A stretch of 62,454 bases of DNA, the filler included, from Hausera hauseri (lineage: Eukaryota): assembly GCA_046269625.1 (NCBI GenBank). It is 10 parts of 10 records of this genome, joined end to end, with 100 filler letters (N's around TTAATTAATTAA, not from the genome) between each part and the next. Parts side by side here need not be neighbours in the genome. Positions count along the whole stretch, not along the records: positions 4,348 to 10,312 come from JBJURY010161643.1; 9 more parts are not named here. One strand, 5' to 3'. Below are positions 4,348-57,300 of the stretch, piece by piece. Numbering within the stretch: the first letter of the stretch is position 1; each line of letters begins with the position of its first letter. The notes below the pieces were generated by a model, which ran no database searches, was not told the origin of the DNA, and was given only the letters and a program-made list of their open reading frames with translations. The position numbers and the translations under genes are program-made.

Positions 4348-7300
4348 ATTTCTATATGTAAATTACTGGCGTTGTGAATAAATCCGTGCACGCTAGATTT
4401 TATCAAATATTAAATTAACAATTCTGACTATAGAACAGTTTATTTCTTATTTACAAATTTATGAAAAAACATTCTATCGATTCTATCAATTTACATACAA
4501 AATCTAAAAAAGATTTGATGCTATTTTCTACATTCCACTTTGCTGTTGTCTTTTCGTCTGATATTTTCCAAGCATATTTTGGCTTCCTTACATCCTTGCT
4601 TAGTAGCAGTTGAAACAATCGTTTAATTTCCTTCTTTAATTTACAATTATTTTTGTTATTCAAAAGAATTTCCATGTTATATGCTGCTTGAGGATGGTTA
4701 TCCGTCTCGACTGTACGGCGTTGCAGTTTTGTTCATAATAAAGGCCCAAATTAAATTGAGCAGGTTGATAATTGATACTGTCAGCACAATTCCAGTAATA
4801 AAATGCATGTTAAATTTAGGTCACTAGCAGCTTTGCAGCCTTTCATATTAACATCGTGCGCAAAACTACAAATTTTGATAATCATTAATCTTTTCATGAA
4901 TGTCTAACACTTCTTCAACACAATTTGATTCATCAACATCATCATTATCATTAAATTCATTATTGCCAACCGCGGGCTCATCTTTATACTTAACTTAAAT
5001 GTTATCAGTAAGGTAACAGTTGTAATTAGTATCAATTTCTAAATGTGGTTCGGTATCAGGGTTTTCAAAAATCGCGTACTTTGCCATTCAAACTAAGTTG
5101 TTGTCTGAATCGCTTCCTGTATTGATGTAGATACCTTTATCGGAAATATTTGACATTATCAAAAATTCTTTGTAATTATATTTAAATGTTTCGTCCTTAT
5201 CTGGGTCAACATTGCTATGATTATCATTGATCTTCGCTAGAACAGTTTGTTAGACTGGTGGCGCCCGAGTCCGCGACACCACACTACCCCCTCCCTCGTA
5301 GCAGAAGTGAAGAAATAGAAAAAGACGGAAGAAGTGAAAAAGTGGAAGAAATAGTTTTATAAGCTATTGCGTCTTTGTATAGGCAAGGCGTTGAATCTTA
5401 TCGATATTTTGTTCTCTGCTGTATTTGCTGAAAGTGACTGTCTTGCGTTTTTTACCGTTTTGCTTGATTGTTTGCTGAGTTGGTTGGTAGAAAGTTAAAT
5501 TTTGATTTGCCATGTCAGTAGATTGAGAACTAGTCGGTATGTCGTTTAGCGTAGTTTTTTGTATTAATGCGGGTTTTGGAATAGCAGGTTGTCGTGAAGG
5601 TAGAACAGAAGGAGGATTGAAGGAGTCAAGGAAGATATGTGCAGAGTTAGTTGTTGGATCCGGTGTGTCATTAACGAAAAATGCAGGTTTTACGTTATAT
5701 ATGTGCAAATTTTGTTCTTTTTCGTTTTTGAGTATTGTAACTGTGTGTGATGTTAGATTGAGAACTTTATATGGTCCTAAGTAGTTCGATTGGAATCCGG
5801 AAGGTGAAGGATTTTTTATTCACACGAACTTTGCATTAAATAGTGAGTCAGGTAAGTATGATTTGTCACCATGCACTATTTTGCAGAAAGAATCCTGGCT
5901 TAATTGAACGAAGTTATTTTGTACAGACCTAATTGTTTCGTTAGATGGTGTGTTGTCCAAATCGGTGAGTTTAAAAAGTGCGCGAATTGTGTTACCGAAA
6001 GGCGCTTCAGCGGGTGAACAAAAGGTGGTAGTAGACGGCGTGTTGCGCCATCCAAGTAAAACAAAAGGGAGGATGGTTGTCAATTCTTATGAGTTTCGGC
6101 CAGGATTTTTAACAAGATCTTGAGAGTGCGATGAAAGCGTTCTAATAAGCTGTTCGAATTGGGATGATATGGCGTTGTGTTTACGTGGTTTATGCCTAGT
6201 CGATTAACTAAAGATTTGAATAGGTTCGATTTAAATTGGGGACCTTGGTCTGTAATTATATAGCGAGGAGAACCTAACCGGCTAATCCAAATCCTTATGA
6301 ATGCATTGGCAATCGAGTCTATACTGATGGAGTGCAAAGGGATGGCCTCAGGCCAACGAGACGTGCGGTTTATCATTGTTAAGATGAATTGGTGGCCGTT
6401 ATCGGAAGGTAACGGGCCAACAATATCTATGTGAACTGACTCAGAACGGGATGTACAGGGGAAATGAAGTAATGGTGGCTTAAGTTATTTAGCTACTTTG
6501 AAATTTTGGCAAGCTACGCACTGTCCAACCCAGCTGTTTGCGTCAGACCTCATCGATGGCCATGTTACGTGGCGTTTGATATGGCGGAATTTAGCCCTAA
6601 AACCTGGGTGATGCAAAGAATGAATGTGTTGAAATGCAGTTTGTTGGGGAGGAGGTGCCAAAATTGGTAAATGTTGTCCAGGTGTCGAAGTATCCATGGC
6701 TATTCCATCGATGATTTATACGGATTTGTATTGTTTCAAAATTTCATTGGAAGGTGGATTTTGGATTAACTGGTCCTTTGAGAAAATTGATGTGACGCTA
6801 ATTGCTTCAACTGACCGTGATACGAAATATGGCAAATTTTAAAGTTGAATGTTCAGAGATATGAGATATGGCGTTCTTGTCACAGTGATGGTTGTTTTAT
6901 GCTCATTATGTGAAAGAAGGTTTTGTGGTCCGTTTGAATAGTGAAGGAACGAGCGATAAGCAAATGTGAAAATTGTTTCACAGCTAAAACAATGGCCAGG
7001 AGTTCTCTATCGAAGGTTGAATAACGGCGTTCTTGTGGCTGCAGCTTGCGTGAAAAGAATTCTAACGGCTCGTTTATACCGTGAGATATTTGATGAAGAA
7101 CCGCTTCTACTGCTGTAGTTGATGCATCAGTTGTTAAAATGAGGTCAGAACCAGGTTTTGGATAAGCTAAAATCTCGATTGTTTTGAGTTTGTCGCGGAG
7201 TTCATCGAACTGGTTGACAAGTTCTGGTGTCCAATATATGAGCTTTTTCTTCGGCCTTGATCCTAGTGGAGCGAAAGGAGCAGTTTACTGTCTACAGTGT

Positions 7301-8696
7301 GGGATGTATTTATGGACAAAATGTAAAGTCCTAAGGAAACTACGCATATCAGTAGTGGTTTTGGGTAGCTCGATGTTTCGTAGCTGATGAATTTTGTCAG
7401 GCTGTGGACTGTGACCGTCAAGTGTCATGACATGGCCAAGGAAATTGACTTCTTTTGAAAGAAGGAACACTTAGAAAAGTTCACTTGCAAGTTGTAGTTG
7501 TGTAAACGTTGAAAAACAAGCCTGAGATTTTTTTCGTGTTGTTTTGGTGATGTCGATGCGACTAGTATATCATCGATATATGGATATGCAAATGGGAAAC
7601 CTGGAAAAACAGAGTCATTGTGTCGTTGAAAAGTTTGTGCTGTGTCCTTTAAACCGAACGGCATGAATGCGTATTCGAAAAGACCAAATGTGTTATTATG
7701 GCCGTTTTTTGGATGCCTTCGGGAGCTACCGGTATTTGGTGGTACGCTTTTTCGAGATCTATGGTCAAATAGATTTTTGTCTTGTGTAAGGAATGTAATA
7801 TATCCTTAATCAAAGGTAGAAAATAAGCGTTCATGGAAAAATGTTATTAAGTTGGCGATAATCGCCTCATGGATGGAATGTGACATCTTTTTTCGAGATG
7901 ACGTGGAGTGGTGATGCCCAAGGTGATTTCGAGCGTTTTGTTATGCCAGCTTGCTCGAATGCAGAGAATTTCGCTTGGACTGCCTATCGTCGGAGTGGTG
8001 AAAGTGGGCGGAGCTTTTGCCTAACGGGCCTAGGATTTTCTGTGATGATATAATGAAGCGTCGTGTTAGCTGGTCAAAATGCTGGGTCTTTTTTATTTAG
8101 TGAAAACAAGACTTAGTTAAATATTGTTGCATTTCCTGGCTAAGTGTAGTAAAGGCTGTTGTTGTTATGGCAATGAACAGATTGGATTTAGTGTGAAAAT
8201 TGACAGAAATTGAGTCGCTTAAATTGCCCTTGTCTGTGCCTTTTGTTCCTCTATTATTGGACTGAAACAAAAACGTTCGATTATTTATATTGGTATTAAT
8301 GTCGTTCTTATTTGCGTTGGTTGATGGTTCTGTTAATATCGATTTAATAGGCGAGATAGGTTGCATGATTGGTTTGTTATTTGCAGAGATCGGTTTTGTT
8401 GAACTGCTTTTAATGATCCGACGTTGTCTACAACCTACAAGGAGGTTGTAGAAAGATAAGAAATCAGATCCAAATATTGGAGATTGTGTGCCGGCAACGA
8501 TGAATGTCCAATTGAAAATGTCGAAGAATGGTGGTAAAGTAAATGAAACCTTAAAAGTGCTAAAAATGCGTAAAGCTTGACCGTTAGCTGTGTATAATTT
8601 AGTGTTAGATGGTAAGATGAATGGTGTTTTGATGGATGGTGGTAACAAAGAAACAGCAACCCCTGAGTCAATGAGAAAGTTGATTGGTTGATTGGG

Positions 8697-10100
8697 TTAG
8701 GATGTTAAGGAGGCTTTTAATGTGAAAACAGTGTAGGTACGGCTATTAGAATGAAGACATTTGCCTGTGCCAGTATGTGACAAAACATCTGGCGGCTTTG
8801 TCAGTTTTTTGGATAGAAAGATTTGGGGAGTCGGAAGAATTATGATGTAATTGGTTAAGTCGACTGGAAAACGTTCAACCGTTGATGCAGTTGCGGGCTT
8901 TATTGTTGAACCTATTATGGTAAATACAAACAATTTCGGATTTTTGAAAAGCTGGTGTAAAGAATGTACATTCCAAGCAACATTTGTTAAATTGGTCCTT
9001 GAATTTAGTGTGATAATAGCACACCATAGGTCGAGTAGGGACCCAGCGGATCTCGAATTTTGCAATAAAGCATGGCTATGATTGGGTGTGAATCGACCTT
9101 GTCGTGACATGGATAAATTGTCCAGTTTAGAAGTTAAAACAGAAATGGCTTGGTGTATTGCCGTGTTTTTAGCCCGGAGAGCGTTTATTTGGCTATTCAG
9201 CGCTACGATTTCTGCATTGGGTGGTGTCATAGACAGTTGTAATGTGGCTGTGACAATAGGAGTATGGTGTGTATTTAATATTTCATAGCTTTTATCAGCC
9301 AGTTGTGCTAACTTTTCTAACGTAGCTGTGTCTTCAACGACGGTTACTAAAGCGCGTATTTCTTTCGGCAACGATTGGGGGAAATATCTGCGCAAAAAAT
9401 CGGCATTGTTAGTCTGGTTCACTCCTAACTTCTTTAATTGGGTTAAAGATGTTTGTAAAAATTCTGATGGTTTCTGGTTTCTTATCGAATTATCATTGAA
9501 ATATTTTTGGATAATATTATTTAGAGAAGGTTCCGTGATTTTTAGGATCGAGCTAATGAGTGTTTTGTATGGGTCACCGCTTTGGAAAATTTCCGACAAG
9601 TTTGGAAGCTGCGACTTAATGTTGGAAGGCAAAAGTATAAACAACCTGTTTGCTTTTAGAAAAGAGTCGACAATATTATTCGACTTCAACCAAGCCGCAT
9701 GAAAGTACAACCACGTCCGGCTGGAATGTTGCTTGTCAACGAAGTACTCTACGCAAGGTAGATTTACAGTAGACGACGAAGGTTGAGGTGAATTTAGCGA
9801 TACACCTATAGTAGGAATGTCGGCAAAGTCTTGTTGGTCCTTAGAAGAGGCTTTTGGATCGGATCCACCTAAAAGACCGTAGTGTACAGTCAGTATAGGT
9901 GTTGAAGATGAGTGGCCTAAACGTGTTATAATATCGGATTGTCGGAGAAAAAGTCCATTAAAACTAAGGCGAAAAGTAGCAAAAGTTGTTTTTCGTTGTA
10001 ACTTGTCGAACAATTTTGCAATTGTTGCTGATTTATGAATGTAGTAAGTTTGTGTATTCTTGTTTTCGAATAAAAAGATAAGTGGGACGAAATTGTCACA
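8697..10100 (-). CDS. gag: Gag of copy A (capsid-like region and CHCC nucleocapsid region) with an N-terminal ubiquitin-like domain
   Basis: Open 534-codon frame; QKPSEFL..LRRYFPQSLPKEIRALV..LEKLAQLADK resembles CsRn1-clade gag; CHCC fingers lie in a shifted frame at ~8870-9030. Confidence 0.8.
   Translation of the reverse strand, partial: CDNFVPLIFLFENKNTQTYYIHKSATIAKLFDKLQRKTTFATFRLSFNGLFLRQSDIITRLGHSSSTPILTVHYGLLGGSDPKASSKDQQDFADIPTIGVSLNSPQPSSSTVNLPCVEYFVDKQHSSRTWLYFHAAWLKSNNIVDSFLKANRLFILLPSNIKSQLPNLSEIFQSGDPYKTLISSILKITEPSLNNIIQKYFNDNSIRNQKPSEFLQTSLTQLKKLGVNQTNNADFLRRYFPQSLPKEIRALVTVVEDTATLEKLAQLADKSYEILNTHHTPIVTATLQLSMTPPNAEIVALNSQINALRAKNTAIHQAISVLTSKLDNLSMSRQGRFTPNHSHALLQNSRSAGSLLDLWCAIITLNSRTNLTNVAWNVHSLHQLFKNPKLFVFTIIGSTIKPATASTVERFPVDLTNYIIILPTPQIFLSKKLTKPPDVLSHTGTGKCLHSNSRTYTVFTLKASLTS
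9864..10095 (-). other. Ubiquitin-like domain ending in LLGG, in frame with Gag
   Basis: LIFLFENKNTQTYYIHKSATIAKLFDKLQRKTTFATFRLSFNGLFLRQSDIITRLGHSSSTPILTVHYGLLGG aligns by eye with ubiquitin (SDTIENVKAKIQDK, RLIFAG, LHLVLRLRGG); ~75 aa. Confidence 0.75.
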
Positions 10101-11619
10101 GAAATCGGGTGTGCAGTATGCTGCATAAGACACGGGCGCGCCCAAATTCCCTTCGAGGTGACAACCGATCCGCTTAACCGGGGTTGTAACCGCCGGAAAA
10201 GACGCTCTGCGTTTCCAGCTCATTTGATGTATGACGTCGATTTCCTGTAACTTTGATAAATGTCTTTCCATAAATTTGTTCTGAATCGATTCATCCGGCA
10301 TATCTCTAACCGNNNNNNNNNNNNNNNNNNNNNNNNNNNNNNNNNNNNNNNNNNNNTTAATTAATTAANNNNNNNNNNNNNNNNNNNNNNNNNNNNNNNN
10401 NNNNNNNNNNNNGTTGGGCAATCCGACCAACAGTACCCAATTGTATTCATCATATTAGTATGAGAATTATATATGAGATTGATATGTAAAAAATCAAGTG
10501 CAGCTGTGTATGTGAAATTAAGGTATAATTTAACAGAGGCATATCGATAGTAGGTGATAACACGGGGTCTAGCCCAACCTTGGACTTCGGACCTCACTTG
10601 TCAAATCAAACAATACGGATCGAGCTTTTCAGATGGACACCTGGCTGCACGCGGTACGGGACAGCGTAGTGTTCCACTAGAGGAATATATCCGGTAGGGA
10701 CCGTGGTAAAAAATCATGAATTTTTCCCACGGTAGCGCATCACGCAAAACACATGATTAATAAATAATTAAGGAATGATAATGAATAAAAAATAGTAATA
10801 AAAAGATAAAATAATGAATGCAAAAAGTACTTGCATGTTAGATTGCTAATCCGTTCGAAATGATCTTACCGCCTGGTCAGAAGCACATGTCATATGTCGC
10901 GCATGTCATGGACTGAAATCGGTAGAGCTCGATGAGGGAAGAAAAATTTTATGGCGCGGCGAGAGTCAAAAATTTTACTGGACGGCGATAGAAGGAAAAG
11001 CAAAATAGGTAATGTTTTACGAGAAACGAGACACGAGTTATGAATTGCCCAATGTTTGGTGAAAATGTCAAGTCAATGTCAGTGAATTGAATGCGCACAA
11101 TTTCAATTTCGTCTGACCATGGGAACATGGGGAAAAATTGATGGGAAATTTTCAAACTCTACAAATTTCCCATTGTTCAAGTCTGCTGGTTGTGGAAATG
11201 GATTGAGCACGTAGCCCATCAGTAGTTTAGTATTTCATATTATAGCCGCCTCACGATCAGATCAATGGATCCGGGTGAAAATGCAACCGAGCGACCGACC
11301 GACCGAAAAAAACACATTGTTAAAAAGTCAAAATCATCATCATCATTATCTCTGTAAATGAGTTCGTTTTGTAGAAAAATCGTGAATTTTATTTTGTATG
11401 ACGAAGACGACGAACGCACAAATTACCACGAGCTTATAATTGAGTACTACAATTACTCACAAGGAGAATGATTGTGGTGGTAGTGGTGACAGTCTGCCTA
11501 CAAACTAATGAGTACCACCAAATGTGTAGCAGGGATATTGAAATGATATAACAACAGCAACAGCAATATAACAAGTTGTATATTTCAAAATCACAAAAAC
11601 AGTCTGTCTGTCTGTCCAT

Positions 11620-20700: not shown

Positions 20701-23364
20701 TAAGCCTGATAGGACTGTGTCGATATGCTTTTGGAAGGTCTGGGAAGCGCTACGGATTCCAAAAGGCATAAAGAGGTATTTGAAAAGGCCGAAAGGTGTA
20801 ATGACAGCGGTTTTCGGAATGTCTGATGGTGCCACCGGAATTTGGTGGTGTTTTTTGTAGATCAATGCAGGAAAAGACGGTTGCACCATGAAGCCTGTGA
20901 AGAATATCGTTGATTAATGGTAGAGTGTATGCATCCATTGTTGATATGGTGTTGAGTTTACGGTAATCACCGCATGGGCGAAAGGTGCCATCTTTTTTGG
21001 AACCACATGCAGTGGTGATGACCAGGCGGATTTGGATCTTCTGATTATGCCTGATTTTTCAAAGTCGAGAAACTCAGCCTTCACTGCCTGTCTGCGTCGA
21101 GGCGATAGCGGGCGGACCTTTTGCCGGATTGATTGTTGATGTGCATTTACGATGTGATGAAAGGTGGATTGAGATGGTACGAATGATTTGTCCTTTGCAA
21201 CAGACGCGTGCAGGAGGACGAAATATATTGCTGTAAATCAGAAGGCAACGATGACAAATTATCCAATGGTGTCGATGTATCGTGACTGGATGCAGTTGAG
21301 GTATGAGTTGTAGACAAGGTGTTGCGACTAGGTGGTATTTGGTGCAGGATGTTCGTGTTGAAGATGGTGTTGGCAGCTGTGCTATTAGTAATGGGTGCCA
21401 CGCAGTTGGCAATATCGCATTTGTCACCGTAATAAAAATTTATATATAATAAATGATTATAAAAATAATTCAAATCGGTAGTCGTTTTCTTTAGTATTGA
21501 CTTGCTGGACGCGATGGCCGGGGTGATCGTCGAAATGCTGCTTATTTGATTAAGATCATTTCCGCTCTTTAAGGAACATTGTTTGCAATCTACAAGTAAA
21601 TTGTAGTGGGGCAGAAAGTCTGAACCCAATATAGGTGTGTGTAACTTAGCTATTGTAAATTTCCATGTGAATGAGCTTGTAAAGTGTGGGAGGGTGAATG
21701 TTAATGTGGTAGCTCCAAAGATTTGTAAAGGTTCAACGGACGCAGTGAACAGTTGCTTTTGTAAAGTGTAATTTTGTTAAATGTGTTGTGTTTGTGGCAG
21801 TAGAGCGATTGCTGTGCCGGTGTCTATAAGAAAGTTTTTTTTCTTTGTTGAAGCGATGACTGCTGCTTCTAACGTGAATACAGCAAAAGAAATGTGTCGG
21901 CTATGTTTTTGCAGGTTGCTGCCTTTGCTAGGACTTGCCGCGTGTCCTAGAGGCGAAATTAGTTTTTTGTAGTTGGTGAGTTTGTCCTACTGTTTTGTGT
22001 AAGCTTATTGGTGTTCATCTTATTGTGTGTGTGCTGTAGGTACAGCCAAGTAGGCATTTGTGTGCTTTTGTGCCAAATTTTGAGTGGTAGATGCAAACGA
22101 TGTCGCTTGTATTGAAATTAGGGGAATGAAATTTACAACTGATGCAGCATTTCTGAGCATTGTTGCCAAATTTGCTATGATAATAGCAAATTAATGACCG
22201 CGCAGGCAAAGACGACAGTCTTTGACGTTGAATAAATGCATTAGGGGGAGCAGCCCTAGAAAAACCCCGTCGAGGTATTGTTAATGCGTTTAGTTTGTCG
22301 TTAATGTTGTTGATTGTTTTTTGAAATGTGCAATTTTCTGTGCGTAATTGCGTAATTTGTTGCATCAGCATTGCATTTTGTTTTTGTTGACCTGTTGTCA
22401 ATGGTGCAGAGATAATTGGTTTTGCATGTGACTGCAGTACTTCGTATGCCTTGTCTGCCAGTTTGGCTAGCTTGTCAAGAGCCGTGAAGTCCTCAACCAC
22501 AGTTAGCAAAGCTCGTATTTAAAGGGGCAATGCATTTAAGAAATAGCGACGAAAAAGCTGAGGACTGTGTTCAGAGGTTACGCCAAGGGTGTTGAGGTGA
22601 GACAAAGATGTGCGTAGGAATTCTGAAGGTTTCTGAAAACCAATGGCGTTGTCGTTAAAGAACCTTTGAATGATTAAATCGATTGAAGGCTTAGTAAGCT
22701 TGAGAACGGCATTATAGAGTTGGGTATTTGGGTCAGTATGCTGAAGAATATCGATTATACTGGTGATTTTAGTTTTGATGGAAGAGGCTGTTGGCTTTGG
22801 CTAAAGAGTCGACGACGTTTTGCAATTGGAGCCTAAATTGGTGCAGTTTTAGCCAATTTTGAGTAAAGTTTTGGCTATCAAGAAAATATTCGGTGCAGGA
22901 TAAATGAGTGTGGAGGGTATTTTGTGTAGGGATGTTGGAAGCGCTGTGTTTGGGTAAGTCAATGATGGGGATCTGTTGTTTAATGAGTTTGTCCGTGGTG
23001 TGAATTGTGGGTGACGAATCCATGCCACCACGGATACAGAAATGAATATGAATACAAATGTGGGTTGAGGAAGATTGTAGAGTTCCAGCGAGGGGTACTA
23101 GAGATCCGTTGTGTGCAAGGTAGAAATAAGAGAAATAGAGTAAGATAGAGATGATGTTATGAATGGTTGCAGTGTGTAAATGTAATGCTATGTATGTGTG
23201 TGTGTTTATTATTTAGAAAAAGAAAGATGGATAGGGGAGAGTAGTGTGCCCGGGGGCGTGTTGCGGGGCTGAAGCGAAAAGCTCAGTTTGATTCAATGGC
23301 GCAGGGTGGGCGGCCGGGACCTCAGCCTCGCAGCGACGGGTCCAAAATTGCGGGATAACCGATC
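17782..23364 (-). mobile_element. CsRn1-like Gypsy, copy B (full internal region, degenerate)
   Basis: IHFCIRGG-MDS before gag; two CHCC fingers; FLIDTG; PFGIRSASQTFQ, YIDDI; YSTFDRELFA; HIDLVGPLP; long S/P/T-rich IN tail; PPT GGGGGGTGA-TGT at the contig end. Confidence 0.92.
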
Positions 23365-54319: not shown

Positions 54320-57300
54320 TGCTTTACGACAAAACTAAATGTAGATAGGTACGATATCTGTCCTTCCTACCTCGGTGATGGCTGTTTCAATGACATGATA
54401 TGCAACAGGGGCTTGTGGTCGGTTTGGATGACAAATGGACGAGATAGGATAAGATGCTTGAAATGTTTTACTGCCAGAACTATGGTTCACAGTAAAGTGT
54501 TAAATAATGGCTTTCTGGTTGTCTGAGTTTTCGAGAGTAAAATTCTAAGCATTTGTTGACGCCGTTGGAAATCTGGTGTAGTATTGCACAAGTAGCTGTA
54601 GTCGGGTTTTGGATAGGCCAGTGTTTCGACGGTTTGTAGGCCTTTGCGTAAGTGTTTGAATTTGATGACTAAATTGGGAATCCACTGGATTAACTGCATT
54701 TTCCTCCCGAATGAGAGATATGCGAAAGGTGCTGTAAGCTCAGAGTAATGCGGTGCATTTTTATTGACGAAATGTGGTGTGCCTAGATAACTCCTCATAT
54801 CTGTAGTGGTCGCTGGTAGTTACATTTTTCAATTGCTGTAGTCGATCAGGATGTAGAGAATAGCCGTGAGGAGCAATGATGTGGACTAAGAAATTGACAC
54901 GTTTTAAAAAGAAGTTGCACTTGGAGAAGTTAACTTGTAAGTTGCTATGATGTAGTCTGTGAAAAATAAGTCGGATATGTTCATAGTGTTGTTTGACGGA
55001 GTTGGAGGCAACTAATATGTCATTAATGTACGGATCCGCAAAATCAAGGCCTGAGAGAACCGTGTTGACGTGACATTGAAAAGTTTGGGCTGCCTTACGT
55101 AAATGGAATGACATAAAGATTTATGCGTAAAGGCCGAATGGAGTGATGACAGCAGTCTTTGGAATGTCACAGGGTACAACGGGAATTTCATGATAGGTTT
55201 TGTGCAAATCTATTGTGGAATACGTATTGCTGTTGTTAAGACTGTGCAGGAAGTCCTTTGTAAACGGTGATGGGTAAGCATCCATGATGGTTAGATTGTT
55301 TTCTTGACGGTGGTTGTCATATGGTTAAAAAATACAATCCTTTTGCTACTACGTGTAATGATGAGGCCCATGGTGATTTTGACCTCCGAACGATACCAGA
55401 TTTTTCGAGTTTGTTAAACTCTGATTCCACGACTTTTCATCTACAAGGAGATAATGGTATCACCTTTTTTCTGATAGGTCTTTGATGTTGGGCGACTATG
55501 TGGTGATAAGTTGTTGATGGGGCTTAAAACTAGAGTCCTTTTTGAATATGCGAGAACAAGAAGAAATTATGTAGCATTTGAGATTGGAATCTAGCGATGA
55601 AAATGATTGAGGCGGTTGCTGTGATTGGCGAAGAACGACCGACATCGCTACCATGAATATTTAGTTTAGCCGACTGTTTCAAAATCGACTTGGATATGTT
55701 AGATGTAATAGAAAAAGTAGATAAATTACTAAATGTATCGTTATCAACCGAAGAATATTTTGTCTAATTCACACATGAGATAGCAGATAAAAACAACGAA
55801 GTGCCTGTTGGTCTGTTTGATAGACAACTGTTAACATTTACGACGGAGTTTCTGCGTAGTAAACAGCCATACTTGCAATCAACTAGCGGATGTTGTGCGG
55901 CCAAAATGTCTGAGCCGATTATGGGCGATTTAATACTGTCCACGCGGAATTTCCAAAAAGAATGTCTAATGAGTTTAAATATGTAAAAATCAGTTCCGTG
56001 GTACCTTCAATGCGCAAAGGTTGACCGCTGACAGTGAAAAGCAATGGAGAAGAAACTGCAATGGATGTAGAGACGAAGGACAAAGGAAGGGGTGAAGAAG
56101 CAGCTCCTGAATCGATAAGAAAATCTATATGTGAAGCATTGGTAGAGAACAATGCAGCTTTTAACAGAAAAACTGCGAAGGCAGTGTTAATGCGGCCAGA
56201 ATTATGAGTGGTATTGCCTATTCCAGAATGTGCCGTGGCATCTAGCGGCGTTTTTAGCTTTTTGAAGATTGTGGAGAAAAGAATGTGAGTGATAAGAAGG
56301 AGGAGGATGAGAAGAGGACGAAGAAAAACTGAAGTAGTTTTTGTAGTGTTTACATCTCGGCACACACGATCGGGCTCGAGACAGAAAATTTGTGTGATAC
56401 ATGCAGATAGGGCTTTCTACCGCAAAACGCTTGTCATAAAATATGCAGCCAAAGAGACATTTCTGTGCGTCTCTGCGAAATTTATTGTGATAAAAATACA
56501 TCATTCGTCCTCCCGGAGATTACTTAGTTGGGCCATGATGGTTAAAACTGAATGTTGTAGAGTATTTTATTGTTTCTGATTAATTGTACCTGCTGTGCGA
56601 AAACAGTTGTAATTTGTAAAATTTCAAAACCTTTATCACCCAGTAAAGCAGGTTCGTTGACGAAAGTAAGGAGTGCCCTGAAGGAAGTGGGCAAAGAGGA
56701 GAGGAAATAACGACGATGGAAATATGTATTGTTGGTGGGAGTAACGCCAAGAGCACTTAGCTGTGAAATAGGGGTACGCAGAAAGTCAGAAAATTTTTAA
56801 ATGCATGTAAGGTGCTAGTTAAAGCATTTCTGTATTATATTATCAATCTACTGCTCGGTAGCATGAAGAACAGATTCATAAAGCATGTCGTATGGTGTTG
56901 AAGACGTAAAATATCAGCAAGATTATTGATGTGATGCTTGATATTTGCTGGAAGAAGTAACAAGCTGTTGGCGCGCAAGAAAGAATCGGCAATATGATTG
57001 GCTTTAAGCCATTGTAAATGGAACTGAAGCTACGTGCGGCTTGAATTAGTTTTATCGAGGAAGAACTCTGTGCAAGGAAGGTTAGGAGAAGCAGATGGTG
57101 TAAAGTCAGCAGGGCGACATCCAGATCTGATTTTGATGGAATTTTCTGAAGAAGGATCAGGGTCTTAACCTCCCCGAATATGAAAGTAAAGGGTGAAATG
57201 AATGATCGGAGAAGCGAAGGAAGAAAGTGAGTCAGAAAAATGTAGAACAGAACCGTAGTGCCACAGATAAAATTCGAAAGTGTGTAGAGAAGAAGATAGA

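What the first reader, a model, noticed from the sequence alone, without database searches (positions are those of the whole stretch)
9864..10095. Ubiquitin-like domain fused to the N-terminus of Gag, with a conserved di-glycine junction in three diverged copies
Seen: ~75 codons ahead of the capsid-like region end in VHYGLLGG|SDP (copy A, GG at 9864-9869), IHFCIRGG|MDS (copy B, 23024-23029) and LYFHIRGG|*DP (copy D, 57168-57173). Each has an F-x-L-x-[FH]-[NY]-G strand (FRLSFNG, FYLAHNG, FYLWHYG) where ubiquitin has RLIFAG. The copies are otherwise very divergent here. Known: Ub/Ubl-GG fusions such as UBA52, FAU and SDE2 are cut by host deubiquitinases, and pestiviruses use captured ubiquitin as a processing signal. 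Inference: this Gypsy lineage may use a host DUB/Ubl protease to mature Gag, possibly releasing a free Ubl-GG that could be conjugated or act as a decoy. I do not know of this architecture in LTR retrotransposons, but could not search for it.
Basis: partly seen in the sequence, partly recalled or inferred. Interest (0 to 1): 0.92.

Follow-up and report, generated by a model that had tools for sequence, protein, structure and literature searches.

The report
Ubiquitin-derived cleavage module before Gag
A lineage of gypsy-type jumping genes carries a diverged copy of the cell's ubiquitin directly in front of its capsid (Gag) protein, always ending in the two glycines after which cellular enzymes cut, so these elements probably borrow a host enzyme to free their capsid protein.

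Summary
On the minus strand, window 9864-10094 encodes a 77-residue beta-grasp domain ending in LLGG, followed by Ser-Asp, a disordered linker and a helical capsid-like Gag. Downstream lie decayed protease, RT, RNase H and integrase of a Ty3/gypsy element whose Gag has the CHCC (CsRn1-clade) zinc knuckle.

The window's domain is too diverged for Pfam. It scores 33-37 bits against a profile of relatives' domains, and that profile hits ubiquitin itself end to end, even without the near-canonical members.

Of 167 related Gag proteins, 49 hold the domain (46 distinct). All 46 end in GG in register, 45 have Leu or Ile at P4, and none has Pro after the GG. The tail is the best-conserved part, while the Ile44 patch is lost. 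Three relatives carry near-canonical ubiquitin at the same junction, nested among diverged ones, which suggests recapture.

Most likely a host deubiquitinase-type protease cuts after GG. This is inferred, not shown.

No copy has Met at its start, and the frame stays open upstream. It therefore looks like an internal spacer (leader, Ubl, cut, Gag), as in cytopathic pestiviruses. I found no earlier description.

The parts
10095..10312 (-). Leader upstream of the Ubl. It is open in the Gag frame up to the piece's edge (72 codons) and has in-frame ATGs at 10301, 10271 and 10220.
   Evidence: 0 stops in frame against 1 and 4 in the other frames. It is not conserved with P0001 (HMMER alignments start at residue 71). 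AF2 gives pLDDT below 50.
9864..10094 (-). Ubiquitin-derived beta-grasp (Ubl) domain, residues 70-146 of the ORF.
   Evidence: AF2 pLDDT 83-92 with strand-strand-helix-strand-strand-3(10)-strand order. Foldseek against PDB gives TM about 0.8 and rmsd about 2 A to ubiquitin, SUMO1 and ISG15. Scores 33-37 bits against the family Ubl HMM. The family profile matches ubiquitin residues 2-76.
9864..9875 (-). Tail L-L-G-G (P4-P1), the putative scissile site after Gly146.
   Evidence: GG is present in 46 of 46 distinct family domains and P4 is Leu or Ile in 45 of 46. G145 and G146 are invariant columns in A1 and A2.
9858..9863 (-). P1'-P2' Ser-Asp, the predicted new N-terminus of Gag.
   Evidence: P1' is Ser in 25 of 46 and never Pro. 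P2' is Asp in 22 of 46.
9747..9857 (-). Disordered linker between the Ubl and the capsid-like domain. It holds no in-frame Met.
   Evidence: AF2 pLDDT below 50 for residues 150-177. Linker length is 15-49 residues in relatives.
9270..9746 (-). Helical capsid-like Gag domain (residues about 186-344). The matching part of relatives hits Pfam DUF7041.
   Evidence: AF2 pLDDT above 90 with 9 helices. There are 223 homologs at E<=1e-3. DUF7041 is found in 19 of 33 relatives, but not in the window's own sequence.
9099..9215 (-). Long single helix (residues 363-401) after the capsid-like domain.
8875..9027 (-). Two CHCC (CX2HX9CX3C) zinc knuckles of Gag, read in a different frame from the upstream Gag (frame change near 9030). 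The second knuckle ends in a stop where the last Cys is expected.
   Evidence: The motif and spacing are as defined for the CsRn1 clade in PMC2582038. Relatives have both knuckles in frame.
8661..8669 (-). Protease active-site D-S-G.
   Evidence: read directly. No Pfam hit for the fragment.
7428..7834 (-). Reverse transcriptase fragments (RVT_1) in two frames.
6883..7284 (-). RNase H domain (RT_RNaseH_2 / RT_RNaseH), Ty3/gypsy type.
   Evidence: E 9e-29.
6083..6697 (-). Integrase: H2C2 zinc domain (6488-6697) and catalytic core (6083-6376), split by frame changes.
5284..5294 (-). Polypurine-tract-like GAGGGAGGGGG after the integrase, a possible start of the 3' LTR.
   Evidence: A similar arrangement follows pol in L002. 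Not verified: no LTR pair lies inside the piece.

Best explanation
The window holds a decayed Ty3/gypsy (Metaviridae-type) LTR retrotransposon of the CHCC-Gag (CsRn1-like) kind. Its gag ORF contains a ubiquitin-derived beta-grasp domain between a variable, unconstrained upstream leader and the capsid-like Gag.

The domain keeps the ubiquitin fold and, above all, the ubiquitin tail [R/K]-[L/I]-x-G-G, followed by a small or acidic pair (mostly Ser-Asp, never Pro).

Proposed mechanism:
1. Translation starts somewhere upstream of the domain.
2. A host deubiquitinase or Ubl-specific protease recognises the fold plus the LxGG tail and cuts after the second Gly.
3. This removes whatever was translated upstream and gives Gag a defined N-terminus, mostly Ser.

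The topology is X-Ub|protein, as in cytopathic pestiviruses (NS2-Ub|NS3) and cellular ubiquitin-fusion genes. In purpose it resembles the 2A peptides at the N-terminus of non-LTR retrotransposon ORFs.

Shown: fold, homology to ubiquitin, GG and LxGG invariance, purifying selection on the domain, its position, and the element type. Inferred: that cleavage occurs, that a host enzyme does it, and what the released leader-Ubl does.
For: Fold: AF2 pLDDT 83-92 over residues 71-140 with the beta-grasp order of elements. Foldseek TM about 0.8 and rmsd about 2 A to ubiquitin, SUMO and ISG15, and to the ubiquitin inserts of BVDV polyproteins and to baculovirus v-ubi.

Homology:
- The window's domain scores 33-37 bits against the relatives' HMM, with 0 of 2000 shuffles reaching that.
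- The profile of 33 relatives matches ubiquitin at 51 bits per repeat, positions 2-76.
- A profile without any near-canonical or Pfam-positive member still hits mono-ubiquitin at E 2.9e-6, with GG on G75-G76.
- 12 of 33 relatives hit Pfam PF00240, best E 3.7e-23.

Cleavage signature:
- GG is present in 46 of 46 distinct domains found with an HMM that excluded the last four columns.
- P4 is Leu or Ile in 45 of 46, and P1' is never Pro.
- In the 33-row alignment A1, the R72 position is Arg or Lys in 25 of 33 and the L73 position is Leu or Ile in 32 of 33.
- In that same alignment the Ile44 position is mostly Ser, Thr or Cys, and mean column identity is 14%.

Translation:
- dN/dS between L001 and L002 is 0.23 for the domain, 0.10 for the capsid-like part and about 0.9 for the 36 codons just upstream.
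- In the window no in-frame Met lies between the GG and the capsid-like domain. The same holds in 31 of 46 relatives.

Recurrence: near-canonical ubiquitin sits at the same junction in P0051, P0136 and P0153, nested among diverged domains on the Gag tree.

Element type: RVT_1, RT_RNaseH_2, Integrase_H2C2 and rve, plus the CHCC knuckle.
Against: - No experiment or proteomic datum shows cleavage.
- The window's own tail is Y-G-L-L-G-G. It lacks Arg72 and Arg74, and the Ile44 patch is gone, and many ubiquitin-specific proteases use these features. A dedicated or tail-only protease would therefore be needed.
- The start codon is unknown, so the upstream partner of the cleavage is undefined.
- The window's copy is decayed (frame changes and stops in gag's 3' part and in pol), so it is probably not expressed as a working element.
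- All relatives come from unnamed metagenome or ENA contigs, so the host taxa are unknown.
- The representatives may be the longest members of their clusters, which would inflate the apparent upstream ORF lengths.
Confidence: 0.65

Rival explanations
1. The domain is not cut. It stays on Gag as a cis-acting Ubl domain, for example to dock on the proteasome, ESCRT or autophagy receptors, or to help particle assembly, as the UBL domains of Ddi1, Rad23 or ubiquilins do.
For: The fold is conserved under purifying selection. This reading needs no unknown protease. From general knowledge, ubiquitin fused to retroviral Gag can substitute for late-domain function.
Against: Uncleaved UBL domains generally do not keep a C-terminal GG (general knowledge of UBL-domain proteins). 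Here the GG and the LxGG tail are the most conserved part, and Pro is avoided at P1'. The Ile44 receptor-binding patch is not kept. A disordered linker of 15-49 residues follows the GG.
Confidence: 0.15
2. Cleavage occurs, but the selected product is the released (leader-)Ubl-GG. It would then be conjugated to targets, or would act as a decoy for host E1 enzymes, DUBs or ubiquitin receptors. Freeing Gag would be secondary.
For: An exposed GG would result. The R72 position is basic in 25 of 33. Near-canonical copies end in LRLRGG.
Against: The surface used by the ubiquitin machinery (L8, I44, H68, V70) is not conserved. The window has Gly at position 72. The domain evolves faster than Gag, at 24-48% against 58-66% identity in the same pairs, which is unlike a modifier with conserved partners. 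The domain also carries a variable N-terminal extension.
Confidence: 0.1
3. The junction is cut by the element's own aspartic protease, or co-translationally, and not by a host enzyme. On this view the ubiquitin fold is only a folding or solubility cap.
For: LTR elements process Gag and Pol with their own protease. A DSG protease is encoded.
Against: From general knowledge, retropepsin sites are hydrophobic and are not Gly-Gly. An [L/I]xGG tail on a beta-grasp fold is the substrate signature of DUBs and Ubl proteases. Recapture of host ubiquitin at the same place fits use of the host's ubiquitin-processing enzymes.
Confidence: 0.05
4. It is chance similarity or an annotation artefact: an untranslated 5' leader that happens to be open.
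For: The window's sequence alone gives only a sub-threshold Pfam hint (TBK1_ULD, E 0.036) and no PDB hit.
Against: all contradict it.
Confidence: 0.01

Closest known systems
Ubiquitin insertions in cytopathic pestiviruses (BVDV NS2-Ub-NS3)
   Same: Host ubiquitin is captured into a polyprotein directly upstream of the protein to be freed, and the cut after GG is made by host ubiquitin C-terminal hydrolases. The topology is X-Ub|protein. BVDV polyprotein fragments with the ubiquitin insert are among the structural matches of the model.
   Different: In pestiviruses these are sporadic, recent recombinants with nearly unchanged ubiquitin. Here the module is an old, fixed part of a retrotransposon lineage. 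It has diverged beyond Pfam detection in many copies and precedes a structural protein (Gag), not a protease or helicase.
Cellular ubiquitin and Ubl fusion genes (UBA52, RPS27A, polyubiquitin, FAU/FUBI-eS30)
   Same: A beta-grasp domain ending in GG is fused in frame to a downstream protein and removed by DUBs. The family profile matches Ub-eS31 and Ub-eL40 fusions across the junction. FUBI is a precedent for a strongly diverged Ubl that is still cut after GG (general knowledge).
   Different: In those genes the ubiquitin starts at Met1. Here no copy has Met at that column, and an open leader or ORF precedes the domain. The downstream partner is a retroelement capsid.
2A peptides at the N-terminus of non-LTR retrotransposon ORFs (PMC3708506, PMC3894237)
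   Same: A short module near the start of a retroelement's ORF separates the element's protein from whatever is translated upstream, without using the element's own protease.
   Different: 2A works by ribosome skipping, is 18-30 residues long and needs no enzyme. The module here is a folded 76-residue domain that would need a host protease. It also occurs in an LTR element, not a non-LTR one.
CsRn1-clade Ty3/gypsy elements (CsRn1, PwRn1, AgCR, Boudicca; PMC2582038)
   Same: Gag carries the CX2HX9CX3C (CHCC) signature, pol order is PR-RT-RH-IN, and gag and pol are either fused or overlap by a frameshift (L002).
   Different: That paper does not mention a ubiquitin-like domain (0 occurrences). 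It states that no cellular homolog of the Gag was found. The clade's tRNA-Trp primer site was not found here. I could not check whether the named members carry the module.
Ddi1/DDI2 (UBL plus retropepsin-like domain)
   Same: A ubiquitin-like domain is combined with a retroelement-type protein.
   Different: In Ddi1 the UBL is a permanent, uncut domain without a conserved GG and is joined to a protease domain in a host gene (general knowledge). It is not a capsid fusion in a mobile element.

Membership tests
Ubiquitin family (Pfam PF00240; beta-grasp Ubl) | Beta-grasp fold | tested here: met
   AF2 pLDDT 83-92. Foldseek TM about 0.8 and rmsd about 2 A to ubiquitin, SUMO1 and ISG15.
Ubiquitin family (Pfam PF00240; beta-grasp Ubl) | Significant sequence match of the window's own domain to the family model | tested here: not met
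   Pfam gives only TBK1_ULD at E 0.036, below the cut-off, and there is no PDB phmmer hit. Against the two near-canonical relatives alone the score is 6.4 bits.
Ubiquitin family (Pfam PF00240; beta-grasp Ubl) | Homology through intermediate sequences (profile) | tested here: met
   The window scores 33-37 bits against the relatives' HMM. The relatives' profiles match ubiquitin 2-76 at 51 bits, and at E 2.9e-6 without near-canonical members. 12 of 33 relatives pass or approach PF00240.
Ubiquitin family (Pfam PF00240; beta-grasp Ubl) | C-terminal Gly-Gly aligned with G75-G76 | tested here: met
   Present in 46 of 46.
Ubiquitin proper (conjugatable modifier) | Arg72 for E1 recognition and the L8/I44/H68/V70 patch | tested here: not met
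   The window has Gly72, Glu8, Ser44, Thr68 and His70. Across the family the Ile44 position is mostly Ser, Thr or Cys. Numbering is anchored on P0051 and on the PDB alignment.
Ubiquitin-fusion processing signal (as in UBA52 and pestivirus Ub inserts) | Ub or Ubl ending in GG directly upstream of the protein to be released, with a non-Pro P1' | tested here: met
Ubiquitin-fusion processing signal (as in UBA52 and pestivirus Ub inserts) | Cleavage after GG by a host DUB or Ubl protease | not testable with these tools
   Needs expression or proteomics.
Ty3/gypsy (Metaviridae) LTR retrotransposon | Gag followed by PR, RT, RNase H and IN in that order, with matching Pfam domains | tested here: met
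   Window. The intact relative L002 has RVT_1, RT_RNaseH_2, Integrase_H2C2 and rve.
Ty3/gypsy (Metaviridae) LTR retrotransposon | Flanking LTRs, primer binding site, polypurine tract | tested here: inconclusive
   There is no LTR pair in the piece or in L002. The 5' end lies beyond the piece's edge. Only a PPT-like tract was seen.
CsRn1 clade of Ty3/gypsy | CHCC Gag signature CX2HX9CX3C | tested here: met
   The window's first knuckle is at 8968-9021(-) in a shifted frame, and the second is truncated by a stop. Relatives have two intact knuckles. The definition comes from PMC2582038.
CsRn1 clade of Ty3/gypsy | tRNA-Trp primer binding site | tested here: inconclusive
   Pattern matches are no better than chance in the window and in L002. 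The relevant region may lie outside the piece.
CsRn1 clade of Ty3/gypsy | Placement in the clade on an RT/RH/IN tree with named members | not tested
   No named reference sequences were available in the tools.
Pfam DUF7041 (PF23055) Gag-like domain | Match to the family model | tested here: not met
   The window's Gag has 0 Pfam families. 19 of 33 relatives match, best E 1.3e-31, so the window is a diverged relative.

The most novel reading that the evidence does not exclude
The ubiquitin module is a general 'liberator'. It lets this retrotransposon lineage express Gag from any upstream in-frame translation: its own unconstrained leader, accessory ORFs, or host ORFs and captured host gene fragments.

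This is possible because a host DUB always trims Gag to the same N-terminus. The module decays quickly and is renewed from time to time by recapturing host ubiquitin at the same junction. That would make host deubiquitination an obligatory, and exploitable, step of the element's life cycle.
Probability: 0.3. Interest if true: 0.9.

Novelty: new variant of a known kind. Interest (0 to 1): 0.78.

Why it matters
If the cut occurs, a widespread group of animal LTR retrotransposons depends on host deubiquitinating enzymes to mature its capsid protein. That host dependency has not been described for LTR elements.

- It gives a clean, testable link between transposon biology and the ubiquitin system.
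- It explains where the 'extra' N-terminal part of these Gag ORFs comes from.
- It corrects how such gag genes should be annotated, because the start is upstream of the module and the mature Gag begins after the GG.
- It supplies a natural series of ubiquitin-like domains that have lost almost everything except the fold and the LxGG tail. This is useful for asking what a processing protease minimally needs.
- The apparent repeated recapture of host ubiquitin is a rare case of a mobile element renewing a borrowed host part.

Tried and rejected
- Single-sequence searches of the window's domain found nothing usable (Pfam and PDB phmmer).
- The word-indexed protein search with the whole ORF found nothing. 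The exhaustive HMMER search was needed.
A narrower alignment gave 3 metagenome loci.
- Two scans of viral contigs found no relative.
- Searches for LTR pairs and for a tRNA-Trp primer site in the piece and in L002 gave nothing above chance. A PBS-like motif near 10132-10143 was considered and dropped.
- I considered that a spliced leader or a splice acceptor just upstream of the domain supplies the start codon. The one good acceptor-like site in L002 is out of frame, so this was not pursued.
- I considered an out-of-frame ATG at 10126 (66-codon ORF). Its translation does not match relatives, so it was rejected.
- Upstream regions were compared all against all. Only P0017 and P0021 are related, so there is no conserved 'pre-Ubl' protein family.
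- A codon-usage score for the upstream regions was only weakly informative.
- One tree script did not return. It was rerun with FastTree.
Full report
**What is in the window**

The finding lies on the minus strand. The piece 4348-10312 holds one decayed LTR-type retroelement, read from high to low coordinates.

- A 534-codon ORF runs from 10301 to 8697.
- Downstream, in changing frames, lie:
  - a protease D-S-G motif (8661-8669);
  - reverse transcriptase fragments (7428-7834, RVT_1);
  - an RNase H domain (6883-7284, RT_RNaseH_2, E 9e-29);
  - an integrase zinc domain (6488-6697) and catalytic core (6083-6376).
- The Gag frame changes near 9030. Beyond that point a second frame carries two knuckles of the form CX2HX9CX3C. 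The second knuckle ends in a stop where its last Cys is expected.
- That CHCC spacing is the published signature of the CsRn1 clade of Ty3/gypsy elements, known from trematodes and insects (PMC2582038).
- No LTR pair lies inside the piece. The 5' end of the element lies beyond the piece's edge.
- The + strand has no ORF of 50 codons or more over 9864-10095.

**Checking the observation**

- The sequence ...ILTVHYGLLGG|SDP is there, with the GG at 9869-9864.
- The correct in-frame range is 9864-10094. Range 9864-10095 is off by one base.
- Taken alone, the 77 residues give only a sub-threshold Pfam hint (TBK1 ubiquitin-like domain, E 0.036) and no PDB sequence hit.

**Relatives**

- The word-indexed search found nothing.
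- The exhaustive HMMER search with residues 1-424 found 223 proteins at E<=1e-3. The best is 46% identical.
- A second search, seeded with the Gag part of one relative, added 14 more.
- All are unnamed proteins from ENA or JGI assemblies, so the host species are unknown.
- Every relative that reaches far enough upstream shows a roughly 75-residue segment ending in GG just before the capsid-like part.
- To avoid choosing by eye, I built an HMM of the segment without its last four columns and searched all 167 proteins.
  - 49 contain the domain, giving 46 distinct sequences.
  - All 46 have GG in register.
  - P4 is Leu or Ile in 45.
  - P1' is Ser 25, Met 5, Asn 5, Gly 3, Thr 3, Ala 2, and Asp, Val and Gln 1 each. 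It is never Pro.
  - P2' is Asp in 22.
- In the 33-row alignment the two glycines are invariant, as conserved as the core Trp of Gag, while mean column identity is 14%.
- Eight relatives with long N-termini but no such domain belong to a more distant Gag type.
- Many others start close to the capsid-like part. These may be truncated ORF calls or elements without the module, and I cannot tell which.

**Is it ubiquitin-like?**

Sequence:
- Twelve of 33 relatives hit Pfam ubiquitin (best E 3.7e-23). Three of them, P0051, P0136 and P0153, are near-canonical ubiquitin.
- The window's domain scores 36.6 bits against an HMM of the others' domains, or 33.4 without its two close relatives. The best of 2000 shuffles scored 14.6.
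- The family profile matches ubiquitin chains in the PDB at 51 bits per repeat, covering ubiquitin residues 2-76 with GG on G75-G76.
- A profile rebuilt without any near-canonical or Pfam-positive member still hits mono-ubiquitin (E 2.9e-6) and ISG15. The result therefore does not depend on the near-canonical members.

Structure:
- AlphaFold2 on the alignment gives pLDDT 83-92 for residues 71-140, with the strand-strand-helix-strand-strand-3(10)-strand order.
- Residues 1-63 and 147-180 are disordered. A confident helical domain covers 195-344.
- Foldseek finds ubiquitin, SUMO1 and ISG15 at TM about 0.8 and rmsd about 2 A.
- In the viral library it finds the ubiquitin inserts of BVDV polyproteins and baculovirus v-ubi, but no retroviral or metaviral Gag.

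**What is conserved inside the domain**

Numbering follows ubiquitin, anchored on P0051 and on the alignment. The ubiquitin letters typed served only as row labels.

- The hydrophobic core is kept (positions 23, 26, 30, 43, 50, 56, 59, 61, 67).
- The tail is the best-conserved part: position 72 is Arg or Lys in 25 of 33, position 73 is Leu or Ile in 32 of 33, and positions 75 and 76 are Gly in 33 of 33.
- The Ile44 position is mostly Ser, Thr or Cys. The L8/H68/V70 surface is not kept.
- The window's copy reads E8, R42, L43, S44, T68, H70, G72, L73, L74, G75, G76.
- This pattern fits selection for a fold plus a scissile tail. It does not fit selection for binding ubiquitin receptors or for E1 activation.

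**Is it translated?**

- Between the two metagenome loci L001 and L002, dN/dS is 0.23 for the domain, 0.10 for the capsid-like part and about 0.9 for the 36 alignable codons just upstream. Synonymous sites are near saturation.
- In the window there is no in-frame Met between the GG and the capsid-like domain. The only in-frame ATGs ahead of the capsid lie upstream of the domain.
- The same holds in 31 of 46 relatives. In 5 the residue right after GG is Met.

**The correction: the domain is internal, not N-terminal**

- No relative has Met in the column of ubiquitin Met1. Near-canonical copies read Phe, Ile or Arg there.
- The frame stays open upstream:
  - 72 codons up to the edge of my piece (0 stops against 1 and 4 in the other frames);
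  - 334 codons in L002 (0 against 10 and 24);
  - 845 codons in L001 (0 against 37 and 49).
- L002 is an intact relative. Its gag ORF is followed by a 1115-codon pol ORF, and its first kilobase shows no similarity to the sequence after its polypurine-like tract.
- Two relatives that are 86% identical from the domain onward lose all similarity just upstream of it.
- Upstream parts are unrelated between lineages, apart from one pair.
- Some upstream parts contain in-frame fragments of host genes: cohesin SCC3 in P0014 (read as one contiguous ORF in L001), Rrp44 plus CNOT1 in P0002, and histone H2A in P0009.
- Cluster representatives may be the longest members, which would exaggerate these lengths.
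- Where translation starts remains unexplained.

**An unexpected pattern: renewal of the module**

- On a quick FastTree tree of the Gag parts, the three near-canonical ubiquitin modules are nested inside a 20-member clade whose other members have strongly diverged domains. They fall in at least two places.
- P0153 and P0154 share 75% identity in Gag, but their domains align over only 28 residues. P0051 and P0030 share 63% in Gag and 24% in the domain.
- Among diverged domains, identity is 38-48% where Gag is 58-66%.
- The simplest reading is that the module evolves faster than Gag and has been replaced by fresh host ubiquitin at the same junction more than once. Recombination between elements is an alternative.
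- This rests on a fast tree and on protein data only.

**Mechanism**

The best-supported model is a ubiquitin-derived processing module:

1. Translation begins upstream.
2. A host deubiquitinase or Ubl-specific protease recognises the beta-grasp fold and the [L/I]xGG tail and cuts after the second Gly.
3. The variable upstream part is discarded, and Gag starts at a defined residue, mostly Ser.

- Under established N-degron rules, 39 of 46 predicted new N-termini (Ser, Met, Gly, Thr, Ala, Val) are stabilising. This is an inference.
- The fold, homology, tail conservation, position and selection are shown. The cut, the enzyme and the fate of the released piece are inferred.
- I put about 0.65 on cleavage by a host enzyme.
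- Rivals:
  - an uncut cis-acting Ubl domain (0.15), disfavoured by the GG and LxGG conservation and the loss of the receptor patch;
  - conjugation or decoy use of the released piece as the main function (0.10), disfavoured by the same surface loss and the fast evolution;
  - cleavage by the element's own protease (0.05);
  - chance (0.01).

**Comparison with known systems**

- In topology it works like the ubiquitin inserts of cytopathic pestiviruses (X-Ub|NS3) and like cellular ubiquitin-fusion genes.
- In purpose it resembles the 2A peptides at the start of non-LTR retrotransposon ORFs (PMC3708506, PMC3894237).
- It is a member of the ubiquitin superfamily by fold and by profile, but the window's own sequence does not meet the Pfam model.
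- The element fits Ty3/gypsy by domain order and fits the CsRn1 clade by the CHCC signature. The clade's tRNA-Trp primer site was not found, and no tree with named members could be made.

**Novelty**

- Ten full-text searches found no description of a ubiquitin-like domain in a retrotransposon Gag.
- The CsRn1-clade paper does not mention ubiquitin. It states that no cellular homolog of that Gag was detected.
- Repbase and GyDB could not be searched, so an unpublished database note cannot be excluded.
- I rate it a new variant of a known kind: ubiquitin-fusion processing, newly seen as a fixed feature of an LTR retrotransposon lineage.

**Housekeeping**

- No contig looked human.
- No spliced model was used.
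Breaks are described only by position.

Noticed in passing
P0051, P0136, P0153 (relatives; no window coordinates): Near-canonical ubiquitin (Pfam E about 1e-22, tail LRLRGG) sits at the same junction as the diverged domains. These proteins are nested among diverged-domain elements on the Gag tree. This looks like repeated replacement by host ubiquitin.
   Followed up: partly
L001:147-2690, and P0002 and P0009 upstream parts: In-frame fragments of host genes lie upstream of the module: cohesin SCC3 HEAT, Rrp44 CSD1 plus CNOT1, and histone H2A. In L001 this forms one contiguous 1299-codon ORF.
   Followed up: partly
L002:92-281: An 85-nt tandem repeat (95% identical units) lies in frame with Ubl-Gag, about 770-960 nt upstream of the domain. 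Each unit begins with ATG. The first Met aligns with a Met in P0017.
   Followed up: partly
window 8875-9030 (-): The Gag frame changes near 9030. The second CHCC knuckle (8875-8928) ends in a stop where the last Cys is expected. Pol is broken by several frame changes and stops, so the copy is decayed even though the Ubl-capsid part is intact.
   Followed up: yes
window 5270-5294 (-); L002:5838-5866: A polypurine-like tract (GAGGGAGGGGG) is followed by TAGTGTGGTGTCGCGG. L002 has a similar AAGGGGGC TGATGTGGTGACCGC after pol. This may be the 3' LTR start, but no matching 5' copy was seen.
   Followed up: partly
window 9926-10126 (-): A 66-codon ORF starting with ATG lies in another frame and overlaps the Ubl. 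Its translation does not resemble any relative, so it is probably meaningless.
   Followed up: yes
window 4453-4478 (+) and 10255-10279 (-): A 26-nt inverted match (88%) links the far 3' flank and the leader. It is of borderline significance (E 0.03 within the piece).
   Followed up: no
window 5348-10312: The element shows a strong strand asymmetry. The sense strand is G-poor (A 0.33, C 0.24, G 0.15, T 0.28), and GC skew on the + strand is 0.2-0.4 across the whole coding part, dropping to about zero in the flank 4348-5347.
   Followed up: no
P0001, P0025, P0027, P0063, P0131: In 5 of 46 domains the residue right after GG is Met. This may be a relic of the original Gag start codon, or an alternative start that bypasses the module.
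   Followed up: no
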